DNA from: Phyllobates terribilis
Taxonomy: Eukaryota
Assembly: GCF_046119375.1 (NCBI RefSeq)
Contig: NW_027362769.1
Location: 386,074,001 to 386,138,000, forward strand
Direction: 5' to 3'
Length of the DNA: 64,000 nucleotides
Part shown: positions 1,726-58,992 of the stretch, in pieces
Position numbering within the stretch: position 1 is the stretch's first letter
Layout of the letters: every line of letters begins with the position of its first letter
The notes under the pieces: model-generated
The model's database searches: none
Told to the model about the DNA's origin: nothing
The model's input: only the letters and a program-made list of their open reading frames with translations
Translations under genes and position numbers: made by a program

Positions 1726-4700
1726 CTAGTGAGTAACTATCACCGTCCTTGTTCTTCTGGGGCCTGAATAAGGTCAGCAGGTTCTCATAGTAACAGGGAA
1801 GCCTCACGCTGGTCATGGGGACCCCGATCTCACGGAAATATTCCTCAACTTCTCCTTTCCCATCAAAATTTTGCACTTCCAACTTTCCCTCCGTCAGTTT
1901 CTTCACATTCTCCAGGCCGCTGAAGACCACAATCTTCAGGGCGAGACGCTTGGACAGATCTGCGAATAGTTTACCCTGGGTAAATTTATAAAAGTCTTGT
2001 TAACAGGATCCAGAGCAGCGCTCCATACATTCCACACCAATAGGCTCAGAATGAATCCCACATAATTCGACCGCCTAGTAATGTGGCCATTACCTGTTTG
2101 ACCTCTTTCTCCTTGCTGAAATGCTCCAAAAAGTTGGTGACCACAAACGCCCCATACGCCCCGCTCAGGGCGGCCTCCAGGCTCTTCTCATCATCCAGAT
2201 CCGCAGAAACGACCTCCGCTCCGGCCTCCTTTAGCTTCAAGGCTGCCGGTTTGCTGGTGTCTCGAGTCACTGCCCTGACCGCAAAGCCGCCATCATCCAG
2301 GAGAGCGGCAGCGACCGATCCGCCCTGAGCTCCTGGGGAGAGAAAGAACAAGACATGGCGGACATTAGCACCACAGCCAAACATCTGGCAACTACTTTGC
2401 CATCCAGAAGTTTGGGAAAGCCGAGTGACCACCCTGCAAATATTCACCAACAGTTCTGATTTTGCTGGGACAACCGTCCTTACCAAAACAGGTACCAAAA
2501 GGCGTTACTTGGTGTCGTAGCACCATTTTTTCTGGAGTAAAAAATGGTTTGAATAGCGACTTTTGTTATTTTCATCCTCCCATCCTACCAATATGGACGT
2601 GATTTACTTTATTCAGATGTTTACAGCTAAATAAAACTGCTGCCAGGATGTTTGTTAACCCTTGAAGTTCTGAAGTTCTTCACAGAAATCATATTGTGGA
2701 ATATAAATTGAAAAATTACGATTTTTATTTTTTACCTCCAAAATTTTGCCAGCTTCCTAAAAGGCCTCCATAACCGTCAGACCTCAAAAACGCCAATAGG
2801 ATTAAAGAGGGAGCTCCCTTCCCTTGTTAACCATCTAGATGCTACTGTCATTATTGACTCCAGCATCTAGGGGGTCAGACAGGCACAATTGGTGCTAAGG
2901 CTGATCGTATCGGTTGCAGCAGGGTGTCAGCTGTAGTATACTGGGTGCCATTCTCTTATTCCTCAGATCAGTAAAAATGCACCATTACAGGGTTAAACAG
3001 TGTTTTTTTGTGCTTTTTCTCATATTACACAAAGGTATTTACGCACAGGTATGAGTCGTGGACTCCCTGCCCCCACAGAGGCACAGTGTAAATTTCCGTA
3101 CCAGATATTTCCTTTATGAAATTGCGCCATGAGGAAAGTCACCATAATGAGATGCACATTGCCCCCAGGATTAAAACTGTGGGACGGCTGCCATAATAAC
3201 GGTGGAGCGGTGCCAGGTGAACCTTGACCTGCATGCAGCACAGCAAGCAGAGATGGCACCAAGGCAGAGGCAGCAAAGAATCTGGGGGAACTTTTCAGGA
3301 CAGAAAATAATAAAATTGCTTGTACATGACAGACTCATGCGTATCTTTGCTTTGCTTCCATCGACCAATGCCTTGATCTGAAGCAACACCTGGCAACGTA
3401 TGAGACCCTTCGCGTCATCCCTAAAAGCTCTCCCTAAAGAAGGGTTTCCACGACAGTACATGATGCTGAAACCTGGGATTGTCTAAACTGGACCTACTTT
3501 GGACCCGACCGCCAAGACCACTCTGGGAACCACTGAATAAAACCTTGGTAAGTAACCCATTGTGTTACTAATAATTCAATGTTACCAAGAGGGATCCAGG
3601 ACGGGTAATTGGTGGTCCGATCAAGACAATCTCTGTTGAACCCTATAATTTGTGGTCTGTTATATGTTTCAACATGTCTTTAGATGTATAAGTGACGATT
3701 GAATTAAAATTGGATGAAGTGACAAGTAATCAACTTTGCCCAATATATCTGATCAGGCGCTTTCACAGTTCTTTTTGTATATTTCAGGAGTCGGAGGATT
3801 GTTATATGTTGTCTTCTTTGTCTACATAATGGTTAAGTCTGGATTGATATTGTTGTCAGCTATGAGGATCCTTGAAACAGGGACTGAATGGTCTCTGGTA
3901 TGTTCCTTCACATGTGGTGAAGGAAATATTGGCCCTTAACAAGATCAGGAAAGTGTGACTGTCTATAATAAAGGAATCCTTCATGTAAGGTAGTATTTTA
4001 AGGGTGTAAATATCCCCGGTAAATTGATAAGGGCACCCTCTTGAAAGGGGTGCTGAATGCAACATTAACACCCAGAAACGGCTGGGTGTGTGTACTTGTG
4101 CTTTTGGGGCACTACGCCTTTCCTTTGCAAGCTGCATGTTATCGATGACCAGGACCAGATGTTGAGGACTTCAATGAGGGAGACCACCAGTCGAAAATAA
4201 ACTTTTTACTTAACGATAACTTTGTGGGAATTATGTACAGTAGATAGCGGGCACACAACTTTATGAACATTTCCTTCACAGTACGGAGCATCTTCACACA
4301 CAGTCTCAGTTCCTTTCTAGTTACTCATCTGTTCCCTATCTCCACTCACTGTTTCGCTTTACTTCACCACAACCCAGCTCAGTACTACAGTCCAGTTAGC
4401 AAGAGTCCTATTCTCAACCTGCGGTTCCGTGACTTCTTTCCCGTCAAGGGAACTAGGTTGTCAACATGGCCGGTACTTAGCTTCTCTGCTACTGCCGCCA
4501 TAGAACTCCCGCTTTGGGCACGCTCTCTCTTCGTCTCACATTATCTGTCTCGTCTTAGCCCGTTACCTCTCTGAATTATAAACTTGGGGCCGTGCTGCTA
4601 GGCATCCTCTCCCAGGAACAGTCTCCGATTGATCACTCCGTCGTCCTGTCAGTTTTCCTTCTCTTTTTACTCCGGTTCACACTAACCACCTTCTCAGTCT

Positions 4701-5158
4701 CCCCTCACTTCGGAACACCCACGTCATGTGGTACTACTTACTGTCCAGACCTTAGATCTGCTTCTGAAGCACACTGGTCCCTATCTGATGTCCTGTCAAG
4801 AAAATGTCTCTGTCCCTTCACCTTAGCCCCGCCCACTCTGGGCTAGTCCCAATCATTAACTCTACCTCTCCCTACTGTTGGGCAGAACACGATACCAACA
4901 CTATTAACGCACATCACAGTTTAAATTCTACAATATAACAATACGCATACTCTTCAAGGGGGAACGTGGGCAGTATGTCCATCTCTTTACACAAGCTGCA
5001 GTCAGATGATTGGGACAGTCACAGAATCCTCTCCCCATACAGACACCACCACCTCCTGCAGGGAAACATTTTTCCAAAACTTCGGAACTTTTCCTCCCCT
5101 CCCCTCGCTTCCACTCACCTGTGGCTCCAAAGACTACAAAAACTTTCTTGTCAGCCAT
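1726..5158 (-). CDS. nmral1: NmrA-like family domain-containing protein 1-like, copy A (partial: coding exons 1-3; exons 4-5 expected left of the window)
   Basis: Exons 5158-5119 ([14 protein letters not shown]), 2332-2094 ([24 protein letters not shown]...[15 protein letters not shown]) and 1975-1726 ([11 protein letters not shown]...[35 protein letters not shown]...DSYSL). Sizes 40/239/250 nt, all GT-AG, phases consistent, no stops. GATGAQG Rossmann motif; colinear with human NMRAL1 as I recall it. Orthology to NMRAL1 versus NMRAL2 is not resolved. Confidence 0.92.
2659..2992. mobile_element. piggyBac-like MITE
   Basis: TTAA|CCCT...AGGG|TTAA termini (TTAA at 2655-2658 and 2993-2996). Confidence 0.5.
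4137..4991 (-). mobile_element. Solo LTR-like insertion, 855 bp, in intron 1 of copy A
   Basis: TGT...ACA termini, exactly bounded by the direct repeat CAAGCTGCA (4128-4136 and 4992-5000). AGTAAA poly(A)-like motif near the minus-strand 3' end; no coding capacity. Confidence 0.6.
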
Positions 5159-57100: not shown

Positions 57101-58992
57101 GAGCAGTATTATAGTAGTTATATTCTTGTACACAGGAGCAGTATTATAGTAGTTATATTCTTGTACATAGGAACAGTATTATAGTAGTTATACTCTTGTA
57201 CATAGGGGGAGTATTATAGTAGTTATATTCTAGTACCTAGGGGGCAGTATTATAGTAGTTATATTCTTGTACATAGAGGGCAGTATTATAGTAGTTATAT
57301 TCTTGTACATAGGAGCAGTATTATAGTAGTTATATTCTTGTACATTTTTATACCTAAATGAAACTCCTTTCCGTCGTCACTCTTCTGTGGTTTGAACTCG
57401 TGCAGCAGGTTCTCGTAGTAGAAAGCTACTCGGACACTTGTCATGGGACAACCAATTTCTCGGAAATACTCTTCTACCTCTCCTTTACTGTCAAAGTGAG
57501 GCACGTGCAGCTTTCCCCCGGTGGTCTTCTTCACATTTTCCAGTCCGCTGTAGACTACCAGTTCCAGATTTAGGCGTTTGCACAGATCCGCTACCAATTT
57601 TCCCTGTAACACAAACAATACAAGGAAGGATATTCTTATTCTTTGATACAATTATTTGAGTTTTTCAGGCTCCTAAATGACAAAATGGTTCTTTTATCCT
57701 CGTTGGTGACCTGTCTTCCTTACTGCTTATGACAAAAAAAGCTAAAATACAGACACAGAGTGCAAGTAGGACAATCTGCTACAAGGGGTCACTGCGGAGC
57801 CTTAACCTCTACTCTCAGTTTGCTCCCTGGGAAGGCACATGAGCTCCTGAGACTCCTCACTTTCCTCCATGATCCTCTGGCTGCAGTTTTCCTGCATGGT
57901 CTCCTCATTATCTCACCTGGATAATTTCTTTGTCCTTCTTAGAGCCTTCGAAAGCATTGGTGACTACGAAGGCCCCATACGCCCCGCTCAGGGCGGCCTC
58001 CAGGCTCTTCTCATCGTCCAAGTCCGCGGACACGACCTCCGCTCCGGCCTCCTTTAGCTTTGCAGCTGCCGGTTTGCTGGTGTCTCGAGTCACAGCCCTG
58101 ACCGCAAAGGTGCCATCATCCAGGAGAGCGGAAGCGACCGATCCACCCTGAGCTCCTGGGGAGAGAGGGGAACACACAAGAAAGGCTAAACTAAAAATAT
58201 GTTATGGTCCTGGTGGACATTTGGAGTGAATGAAGTCCCTCAGCCTCACAGCGTGGGTCCCTGATATGAGCTACGTCTTTAGCCATGAGGTCAATGATAA
58301 AATACTGTCTTACTGCAGCCACCACTAGAGGGAGCTCTGGAGCAGTCTGTATACAGTCCTATCACTGGCCTCTTCCTGCAGCCACCACTAGAGGGAGCTA
58401 AGGAGCTGTCTGTATACTGTCCTATCACTGGTCTCTTCCTGCAGCAACCATCAGAGGAAGCTCAAGAGCTGTATGTATAGAGTCCTATCACTGGCCTCTT
58501 CATGCAGCCACCACTAGAGGGAGCTGTGGAGCTGTCTGTATACAGTCTTATCACTGGTCTCTTCCTGCAGTCACCACTAGAGGGAGCTCTGGAGCGGTCA
58601 GTATATAGTCCCATCACTGTGCTCTTCCTGCAGCCAGCACTAGAGGGAGCTCTGGAGCTGTCTGTATACTGTCCTATCACTTGTCTCTTCCTGCAGTCAC
58701 CACTAGAGGGAGCTCTGGAGCAGTCTGTATATAGTCCTATCACTGGCCTCTTAATAAACCCACCACTAGAGGGAGCTCAGGAGCTGTCTGTATATAGTTC
58801 TATCACTGGCCTCTTCCTGCAGCCACCACTAGAGGGAGCTCAGGAGCAGTCTGTATACAGTCCTATCACTGGGATCTGTGTGCATGGTGTCACCAGCGTG
58901 GATGGGGTAGAGCTTGTGCGCTCTGTGGTCCGGTAGTTAGTAATTGACTTACCTGTGGCTCCGAAGACCACGACTACCCTCTTCCCGGCCAT
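48196..58992 (-). CDS. nmral1: NmrA-like family domain-containing protein 1-like, copy D (complete, 296 aa, most divergent)
   Basis: Exons 58992-58953 ([14 protein letters not shown]), 58155-57917, 57603-57354, 48732-48542 and 48366-48196 ([29 protein letters not shown]...AFKW*). 891 nt, GT-AG introns, AATAAA on the minus strand at 48179-48174. Confidence 0.93.
48780..57345. repeat. 35-36-bp AT-rich satellite (gtacataggagcagtattatagtagttatattctt), about 240 copies, filling intron 3 of copy D
   Basis: Continuous array between exon 4 (starts 48732) and exon 3 (ends 57354) of copy D. Confidence 0.98.
58310..58870. repeat. About 62-bp tandem array (core ctgcagccaccactagagggagct) in intron 1 of copy D, about 9 copies
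   Basis: Tandem units; core shared with 22035-22665. Confidence 0.9.

What the first reader, a model, noticed from the sequence alone, without database searches (positions are those of the whole stretch)
1726..58155. Paralog differences concentrate at predicted cofactor/substrate-pocket residues
Seen (human numbering; copies are colinear to about residue 250): 80-82 are NFL (A), NFW (B, C), NAF (D) versus human NYW. 152-155 are LPCY (A), LPGY (B), LAFY (C), VAFY (D). 126-129 are EVQN (A), EVLH (B), DVLH (C), HVPH (D). 250-264 are [15 protein letters not shown] (B), [15 protein letters not shown] (C), [13 protein letters not shown] (D). A and B differ at 21 of 250 nt in exon 3, giving 11 amino-acid changes, several in these patches. 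Established: these segments correspond to loops around the nicotinamide ring and the C-terminal lid in atypical SDRs. Inference: diversification of ligand specificity.
Basis: partly seen in the sequence, partly recalled or inferred. Interest (0 to 1): 0.7.

Follow-up and report, generated by a model that had tools for sequence, protein, structure and literature searches.

The report
Frog NMRAL1 paralog cluster, pocket variants
Four neighbouring frog copies of the NADPH-sensor gene NMRAL1 differ all along the protein rather than mainly in the cofactor pocket, but copies A and D carry pocket-residue substitutions that recur in distant frogs, so they probably are functional variants.

Summary
The window holds four NMRAL1/HSCARG-type genes with canonical splice sites and open frames. 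Copy A is cut by the window edge.

The claim that differences "concentrate" in the pocket fails:
- dN/dS is below 1 for every pair (0.14-0.46).
- Sites that vary between copies are the sites that vary in other vertebrates (p 4e-11).

About 115 full-length frog NMRAL1 proteins change part of the picture. Copy A belongs to a recurrent type (L82, N129, usually C154, F246) found in poison-frog relatives and in ranoid frogs. The rest of these proteins clusters by taxon (AU p 2.6e-5). This means either an old paralog homogenised by gene conversion except at selected sites, or convergence. Copy D belongs to an old lineage with Ala81, the residue changed in the human Y81A crystal-structure mutant (3e5m). 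Copy C's lineage keeps its patch states across hyloid frogs.

NMRAL1 duplication with positive selection in frogs is already published (PMC11342244). The scan noted this same cluster twice more on this window (s1-230226, s1-230054).

The parts
5119..5158 (-). Copy A exon 1 ([14 protein letters not shown], phase-1 end)
   Evidence: Motif search and GT donor
2094..2332 (-). Copy A exon 2 (residues 14-93; NFL at 80-82)
   Evidence: AG/GT sites; Pfam NmrA 67.9 bits
1726..1975 (-). Copy A exon 3 (residues 94-176; EVQN with N129, LPCY). Exons 4-5 lie beyond the window's left edge
   Evidence: Pfam NmrA; no exon-4/5 homologue in 1-1725
20417..20456 (-). Copy B exon 1
15696..15934 (-). Copy B exon 2 (NFW)
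15286..15535 (-). Copy B exon 3 (EVLH, LPGY)
11100..11290 (-). Copy B exon 4
10139..10318 (-). Copy B exon 5 with stop codon ([15 protein letters not shown]); 299-residue product
41637..41676 (+). Copy C exon 1
   Evidence: Loose ends of spliced contigs of relatives carry this exon joined to exon 2. The peptide is identical to the Dendropsophus orthologue
44185..44423 (+). Copy C exon 2 (NFW)
   Evidence: junction 44423|44658 seen in spliced contigs of four related organisms
44658..44907 (+). Copy C exon 3 (DVLH, LAFY)
   Evidence: junctions confirmed
45005..45195 (+). Copy C exon 4 (weak GTCTGG donor, but it is used)
   Evidence: junction 45195|45327
45327..45512 (+). Copy C exon 5 with stop codon ([15 protein letters not shown]); 301-residue product
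58953..58992 (-). Copy D exon 1
57917..58155 (-). Copy D exon 2 (NAF at 80-82). Codons ~9-79 are homogenised with A and B
57354..57603 (-). Copy D exon 3 (HVPH, S132, VAFY)
48542..48732 (-). Copy D exon 4
   Evidence: junction 48542|48366 in spliced contigs of two relatives
48196..48366 (-). Copy D exon 5 with stop codon ([13 protein letters not shown], deletion of 251-252); 296-residue product
1711..2374 (-). Sharply bounded A-B similarity tract (pairs with 15271-15976): exon 3, intron 2, exon 2, plus 15 and 42 nt of the flanking introns. Beyond it, introns 1 and 3 share no homology
   Evidence: blastn and alignment
57957..58166 (-). D-to-A/B gene-conversion tract in exon 2 (92% identical to A, 89% to B). 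It ends at codon 80
   Evidence: Third-position identity 0.8-1.0 against 0.3-0.5 beyond the tract; dS 0.145 against more than 1

Best explanation
The window carries four members of an anuran-wide multigene family of NMRAL1/HSCARG-type NADPH-sensor proteins (atypical SDR, NmrA fold). They lie among minisatellite arrays. The copies represent old paralog lineages. B is the canonical type. A is an 'N129/L82' type. C and D are two lineages of a second superclade. Most amino-acid differences between the copies lie at positions that are weakly constrained in all vertebrates, and they are spread over the whole protein under purifying selection. Gene conversion homogenises the Rossmann half (codons ~9-79 between D and A/B; an exon 2-intron 2-exon 3 tract between A and B). 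This makes the variation appear to begin at residue 80. On top of this ordinary background, a few lineage-defining substitutions sit at the cofactor edge and are kept or regained across frog families. A-type copies carry F7, L82, Q/P/M128, N129 (the SDR Tyr/His position four residues before Lys133), usually C154, and F246. D-type copies carry Ala81, and some also lack residues 251-252. I infer that A and D have altered NADP(H) or ligand binding and act as differently tuned redox sensors or binders, while B and C keep the usual pocket. Shown here: gene models, splicing of C and D orthologues in relatives, conversion tracts, absence of enrichment, recurrence of the signature sites. Inferred only: any change in binding.
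For: Gene models have AG/GT sites and open frames. Exons score as Pfam NmrA and match PDB HSCARG at E 1e-32. Spliced contigs from four related organisms reproduce C introns 2-4 and D intron 4 exactly. There is no enrichment of variable sites or of dN in pocket sets, and omega is 0.14-0.46. Paralog-variable sites have entropy 1.13 against 0.52 in other vertebrates (p 4e-11; exon 3 alone p 8e-6). Conversion is shown by dS 0.10-0.15 in codons 14-79 against more than 1 elsewhere, by the third-position profile and by sharply bounded tracts. The family survey gave the patch table of 124 sequences and a tree built without the trait columns. In that tree winD groups with Rhinoderma (99*) and with the Mixophyes and Pyxicephalus copies that also carry A81, which needs one change on the tree. 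winC sits in a 13-row hyloid clade (99*). The six A-type rows are not a clade on the remaining columns (dlnL 135, AU p 2.6e-5). Only positions 82, 129, 246 and 247 separate A-type from the other A/B rows. Positions 82, 128 and 129 differ in 6 of 6 same-taxon pairs, 154 in 5 of 6 and 246 in 5 of 5. The Nanorana tandem pair differs in exon 3 by 9 synonymous and 3 replacement codons, and the three replacements are 128, 129 and 154. All three lie among the 11 replaced sites of window A-B (hypergeometric p about 0.002, my calculation). Tyr81, Arg37 and Lys133 are reported as critical for NADPH binding (PMC4027218), and PDB 3e5m is the Y81A mutant. Positive selection on duplicated frog NMRAL1 is published (PMC11342244).
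Against: No distance to NADP could be computed, because no coordinates are available. The 'pocket' sets therefore rest on the SDR fold, secondary structure and three mutated residues. Type-II sites that define the C and D lineages are not enriched in pocket residues. Family-wide rate-shift sites are not enriched either. Only two or three well-supported independent occurrences of the A-type exist, so the independent-pairs test has no power. The A-type group was named after the tree had been seen. Phe81 is the usual non-mammalian state, so 'NFW versus human NYW' is ordinary. HSCARG's effects on RING1 and H2A ubiquitination do not need NADPH binding, so pocket changes need not alter every function. 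Expression of A and B in this species was not shown.
Confidence: 0.6

Rival explanations
1. Purely ordinary divergence. The four copies are old tandem duplicates that drift at weakly constrained sites under purifying selection. Gene conversion shapes where differences remain. The listed patches are a hand-picked subset with no functional meaning.
For: No enrichment in the patches or in a-priori pocket sets. Omega is below 1 everywhere. There is a strong correlation with site variability in other vertebrates. Positions 128 and 154 are among the most variable sites in vertebrates, and F81 is common.
Against: It does not explain why the same rare states (L82, N129, C154, F246) recur together in dendrobatoid and ranoid copies whose remaining sequence clusters by taxon. 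It does not explain why the only three replacements in Nanorana exon 3 fall on 128/129/154 amid nine synonymous changes. It does not explain why A81 is conserved throughout the D lineage.
Confidence: 0.25
2. Independent, convergent neofunctionalisation. Canonical NMRAL1 duplicated separately in dendrobatoids and in ranoids. Each time, one daughter acquired W82L, H129N, X154C and Y246F by parallel positive selection. No ancient A-type paralog or conversion is needed.
For: A-type rows group with same-taxon canonical copies, and their monophyly is rejected. The Nanorana pair is 91-95% identical including introns, as expected for a young duplicate. Published branch tests find positive selection on duplicated NMRAL1 in Nanorana and other frogs.
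Against: Five to seven identical derived states arising twice is demanding. In the window, A and B share no intron homology outside a ~660-bp tract with sharp ends. That pattern fits old genes plus conversion better than a young duplication. Conversion is independently demonstrated in this cluster.
Confidence: 0.25
3. Copies A and/or D are decaying. Relaxed constraint or incipient pseudogenisation explains N129, A81, S132 and the 251-252 deletion.
For: Omega of the A-B pair (0.46) is higher than for the older pairs. D has a long branch in the short exon-3 trees. D-like spliced contigs in relatives have low depth.
Against: Frames are open and all splice sites are canonical. A D-like exon 4-5 junction is spliced in relatives, and the listed differences there are synonymous. 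The A81 and N129 states are conserved in orthologues or analogues in several frog families, each with a full-length open frame. The D branch dN is only about 1.3 times that of C (my arithmetic).
Confidence: 0.08

Closest known systems
Human HSCARG / NMRAL1 (PDB 2exx, 2wm3, 2wmd, 3dxf, 3e5m)
   Same: Same length and colinear to residue 250. It shares the GxxGxxG loop, R37, K133, the five-coding-exon layout and the NmrA fold. A frog homologue models onto 2exx_A at TM 0.90 with 59% identity.
   Different: The gene is single-copy in the amniote and salamander genomes sampled here, but there are four or more tandem copies here. Position 81 is F (A-C) or A (D) instead of Y. Position 129 is N in copy A. 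D lacks residues 251-252.
Duplicated NMRAL1 of high-elevation frogs (Pristimantis, Nanorana parkeri, Scutiger), reported under intensified positive selection (PMC11342244)
   Same: Same gene family and the same phenomenon of duplication with selection in anurans. Nanorana's tandem pair was examined here directly (L002).
   Different: That study links the duplication to elevation and, in the passages I read, gives no site-level pocket mapping. Here the duplicates are seen in nearly every anuran sampled, and the recurrent differences are assigned to positions 7, 82, 128, 129, 154 and 246.
Aspergillus NmrA and bacterial/plant NmrA-like reductases (QOR2, triphenylmethane reductase, PCBER/PLR)
   Same: Same atypical-SDR fold. 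Cofactor binding is at the C-terminal edge of the sheet (fold hits).
   Different: Only 15-26% identical. Several of these are true enzymes with a catalytic Lys/Tyr pair. The frog family mostly has HxxxK, with NxxxK (A-type) and YxxxK (P0026, P0114) variants.
Bovine NMRAL2 (PMC11640032)
   Same: A second NmrA-like paralog in a vertebrate, with proposed functional divergence from NMRAL1.
   Different: It is 47.6% similar to NMRAL1 and carries an 11-residue deletion. It is not a tandem, conversion-linked cluster.

Membership tests
NmrA-like family (Pfam PF05368), atypical SDR | Profile match above the curated cut-off | tested here: met
   Searched exon by exon. Exon 2 scores 67-68 bits and exon 3 scores 40-41 bits. 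Exon 4 scores 38.6 (B) and 30.5 (C) against a cut-off of 27. D exon 4 scores 21 bits alone. Exon 5 is not covered by the profile.
NmrA-like family (Pfam PF05368), atypical SDR | N-terminal Rossmann glycine motif GxxGxxG | tested here: met
   G11-A-T-G14-A-Q-G17 spans the exon 1/2 junction in all four copies.
NMRAL1 / HSCARG | Close sequence similarity over the full length to the solved human protein, colinear | tested here: met
   Matches to 2exx/3dxf/2wm3: E 1e-32 (exon 3), 1.6e-22 (exon 2), 1.3e-12 (exon 5). Exon 4 was not searched against PDB. Numbering is identical to residue 250.
NMRAL1 / HSCARG | Residues reported critical for NADPH binding: Arg37, Tyr81, Lys133 | tested here: inconclusive
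   R37 and K133 are present in all four copies. Position 81 is Phe in A-C, which is the usual non-mammalian state, and Ala in D.
NMRAL1 / HSCARG | His at the SDR catalytic-Tyr position (HxxxK) | tested here: inconclusive
   Met in B, C and D. Copy A has NxxxK. His was found in 51 of 52 other vertebrate exon-3 sequences.
NMRAL1 / HSCARG | NmrA fold with a C-terminal helical domain | tested here: inconclusive
Tested only on a database homologue (P0026, Dendropsophus): pLDDT 89, TM 0.90 to 2exx_A.
NMRAL1 / HSCARG | NADPH binding and NADPH-dependent dimer restructuring | not testable with these tools
   Needs protein biochemistry.

The most novel reading that the evidence does not exclude
Frogs keep an ancient 'A-type' NMRAL1 (F7, L82, N129, C154, F246) beside the canonical copy. 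Gene conversion keeps overwriting the rest of the gene, while selection protects a handful of cofactor-edge residues. These residues are conversion-resistant islands that have defined a differently tuned NADP(H) or ligand sensor for more than 100 million years. The Ala81 D-type is a third such variant.
Probability: 0.35. Interest if true: 0.6.

Novelty: new variant of a known kind. Interest (0 to 1): 0.45.

Why it matters
NMRAL1 is a single-copy NADPH sensor in mammals. It feeds into nitric-oxide synthesis, NF-kB and antiviral signalling. Frogs carry a tandem family whose members differ at the residue equivalent to the SDR catalytic Tyr (H, N or Y) and at the NADPH-critical position 81. That would be a natural series of sensor variants for asking how redox sensing thresholds or ligand range are set. 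It would also be a clean case of selection holding a few sites apart inside genes that otherwise evolve in concert. For the scan, the lesson is that the within-window pattern alone did not support the claim. Only comparison across species did, and only for two of the four copies.

Tried and rejected
- The HSCARG structure paper (PMC1885584, PubMed 17496144) is not held. No published NADP contact list could be read, so the pocket sets are knowledge-based.
- The first word search with exon 3 alone returned only 23 short fragments of at most 72% identity, mostly mammal-like. It was useful only for site variability.
- Short exon-3 trees were unresolved.
- DNA look-ups for P0027, P0028 and P0076 found nothing, so no multi-frog codon alignment was built. 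Site and branch-site dN/dS tests were not run; PAML and HyPhy are also unavailable.
- The independent-pairs test of N129 against L82 has only three supported pairs and no power.
- Type-II and rate-shift analyses for the C and D lineages showed no pocket enrichment.
- RNA evidence from the window's own species was not obtained. The high-share runs look like DNA, and the single read-laying run went to four related organisms.
- The large representative search was not used.
- I considered and rejected the idea that A and B are simply young duplicates: their introns share no homology outside one sharply bounded tract.
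Full report
WHAT IS THERE. Six-frame motif searches and pairwise comparison of open stretches located four NMRAL1/HSCARG-like genes. Their exon positions are as follows:

- A (minus strand): exons 5119-5158, 2094-2332, 1726-1975. Exons 4-5 lie off the left edge of the window.
- B (minus strand): 20417-20456, 15696-15934, 15286-15535, 11100-11290, 10139-10318. The product has 299 residues.
- C (plus strand): 41637-41676, 44185-44423, 44658-44907, 45005-45195, 45327-45512. 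The product has 301 residues.
- D (minus strand): 58953-58992, 57917-58155, 57354-57603, 48542-48732, 48196-48366. The product has 296 residues.

All introns are AG/GT and all frames are open. Searched exon by exon, they match Pfam NmrA and human HSCARG chains. Those alignments also fix the human numbering: N80-Y81-W82, A126-A-A-H129, K133, L152-P-C-Y155, G250-F-P-G...

The rest of the window is minisatellite arrays. D's intron 3 is an 8.6-kb array of a 35-bp unit.

OBSERVATION. Every string and number in the finding is exact.

EXPRESSION AND MODEL CHECK. No RNA run of the same organism was identifiable. Contigs of four related organisms (90-97% identical) carry spliced forms. Their junctions coincide with my C introns 2, 3 and 4 and with D intron 4. 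Loose ends of those contigs carry C exon 1. Of the differences listed for the C orthologue, none falls in the four patches. That list is incomplete.

IS VARIATION CONCENTRATED IN THE POCKET? No, by several tests:

- Variability by region: codons 14-79 vary at 14-15% of sites. Everything from residue 80 on varies at 41-64%.
- A-priori set: I chose cofactor segments beforehand from the SDR fold (10-17, 36-41, 57-60, 78-83, 110-114, 129-133, 152-158). They vary at 48-52% against 47% (p 0.8-1).
- Substitution rates: pairwise dN/dS is 0.46 for A-B and 0.14-0.21 for the other pairs. dN in the a-priori segments is equal to or below dN in the rest.
- General site variability: sites that differ between the copies are the sites that vary among other vertebrate NMRAL1. 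Mean entropy is 1.13 against 0.52, p 4e-11, and p 8e-6 for exon 3 alone. Positions 126, 128 and 154 are among the most variable in vertebrates. Phe81 is the usual state outside mammals and salamanders.
- Conserved sites: at sites conserved in other vertebrates, departures occur in 7 of 14 patch sites against 20 of 83 others (p 0.058, post-hoc patches). For the a-priori set the figures are 6 of 16 against 21 of 81 (p 0.37).

GENE CONVERSION. In codons 14-79, dS is 0.10 (A-B), 0.145 (B-D) and 0.27 (A-D), against more than 1 elsewhere. Third-position identity between D and A/B is 0.8-1.0 up to codon 79 and 0.3-0.5 after it (alignment). The first 'patch' (80-82) thus begins exactly where the tract ends.

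A and B share one sharply bounded block: exon 3, intron 2 and exon 2, plus 15 nt of intron 3 and 42 nt of intron 1. They also share about 70% identity around exon 1. The rest of introns 1 and 3 has no detectable homology. This argues for old genes joined by a conversion tract, not a young duplication.

WHERE THE PATCHES SIT. I could not obtain coordinates, so no distances to NADP were measured. I predicted the structure of a database frog homologue (P0026). The model has pLDDT 89 and TM 0.90 to 2exx_A. In it:

- 80-82 follow strand beta4.
- 128-142 form the helix that carries H129 and K133.
- 152-155 follow strand beta6.
- 250-253 form a loop before a helix at 254-266.

The first three placements are where SDRs hold the nicotinamide half of the cofactor (established knowledge of the fold). 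The role of 250-264 was not tested. Arg37, Tyr81 and Lys133 are reported as critical for NADPH binding (PMC4027218). PDB 3e5m is the Y81A mutant.

THE TURN: OTHER FROGS. A word search with a stop-free reference that allowed longer candidates found partial frog proteins. Two of their loci showed tandem NMRAL1 genes in Dendropsophus and Nanorana. A third search with P0026 returned about 115 full-length frog proteins. There are several per species in nearly every anuran sampled, all annotated as NMRAL1.

I built a tree from these without the trait columns. It places the window's copies as follows:

- B and C sit next to Phyllobates and Dendrobates sequences at 92-94% identity. I infer that the window comes from a poison-frog relative.
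- C lies in a 13-row hyloid clade (99*). That clade keeps A or S at 153, F154 and P250 throughout, with the rest of C's patch strings largely conserved.
- D groups with Rhinoderma (99*), then with Mixophyes and Pyxicephalus. All four have Ala81, which needs one change on the tree. winD and Rhinoderma share the 251-252 deletion.
- A and B lie in a 51-row superclade that clusters by taxon.

THE A-TYPE. Within that superclade, six rows carry L82 together with N129. They are winA, two Ranitomeya copies, Anomaloglossus, Nanorana and Lithobates. The evidence on this type is:

- On the remaining columns, their monophyly is rejected (dlnL 135, AU p 2.6e-5). I named the group after seeing the tree.
- The only type-II sites that separate them from the other 45 rows are 82, 129, 246 and 247.
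- In six same-taxon A-type/canonical pairs, positions 82, 128 and 129 differ every time, 154 in 5 of 6, 7 in 5 of 6, and 246 in 5 of 5. Only 3e-4 sites would be expected to differ in all six pairs if the pairs were independent. They are not fully independent; there are two or three independent lineages.
- In Nanorana the tandem pair is 91-95% identical including introns. Exon 3 has nine synonymous codon differences and three replacements: L128M, H129N and S154C. All three lie among the 11 replaced sites of the window's A-B pair (hypergeometric p about 0.002, my calculation).

Two other family-level points stand out. A YxxxK variant, the canonical SDR motif, occurs in Dendropsophus P0026 and Dendrobates P0114. 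By contrast, type-II sites of the C and D lineages and family-wide rate-shift sites are not enriched in pocket residues.

READING. The general claim is wrong and the specific intuition is partly right. Most differences are ordinary and spread out, and conversion creates the impression that they start at residue 80. Copy A belongs to a recurrent variant class defined almost only by cofactor-edge residues. Copy D belongs to an old lineage with Ala at the NADPH-critical position 81. Whether the A-type is an ancient paralog with conversion-resistant sites or a convergent product cannot be settled here. I favour the former, because of the bounded tract and the number of shared states. Functional consequences are inferred, not shown.

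LITERATURE AND NOVELTY. [quoted passage not shown] That study attributes them to high elevation. The present survey shows that the duplicates are general in anurans. The paralog classes defined by residues 81, 82 and 129 were not found described in the papers I could search.

RULES FOLLOWED. Spliced models were searched exon by exon, by reference. Exons were joined only inside scripts, for alignment, dN/dS and trees.

Noticed in passing
window 48782-57345: Intron 3 of copy D is almost entirely one minisatellite: a 35-bp unit, about 243 copies, 92% matches, 8.6 kb. The gene still appears spliced in relatives.
   Followed up: partly
window 26125-32601, 33084-35140, 35936-38690, 59398-61602, 61613-63993: The space between B and C and the stretch beyond D consist of long arrays with 30-, 86-, 30-, 41- and 31-bp units. 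The 31-bp unit at 61613-63993 appears related to the arrays inside B's intron 3 (11513-12029, 12622-13426).
   Followed up: no
window 44185-45512: Copy C has very short introns 2-4 (234, 97, 131 nt), whereas B and D have kb-scale introns. Its exon-4 donor is a weak GTCTGG, yet it is used in the spliced contigs of relatives.
   Followed up: partly
P0026 (Dendropsophus), P0114 (Dendrobates): Two frog NMRAL1 paralogs have Tyr at 129. This restores the canonical SDR YxxxK motif, together with Y81 and F154. They may be catalytically competent reductases.
   Followed up: no
tree: P0189, P0193, P0194, P0200 (bats); also P0054 Rousettus: Bat proteins annotated NMRAL1 (SFW or NFW at 80-82, LAAYF or VPAYF at 152-156) form a long separate branch beside the frog clade, not with the other mammals. 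They may represent a second mammalian paralog such as NMRAL2.
   Followed up: no
L002 (Nanorana parkeri KN906975.1) 14500-26900: Two tandem NMRAL1 genes are 91-95% identical across exons and introns. In exon 5 replacement differences outnumber synonymous ones (10 against 3 codons).
   Followed up: partly
window codons 257-279 (C-D), 217-231 (B-D) and 233-247 (B-C): There are local peaks of third-position identity (0.8). They could be further short conversion tracts in exons 4-5, but the windows are too short to judge.
   Followed up: no
window 44231 (loose ends): Contigs from relatives match the homogenised part of exon 2 but continue into a non-C paralog sequence at high depth. At least one A/B/D-type copy is therefore transcribed in the relatives.
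   Followed up: no
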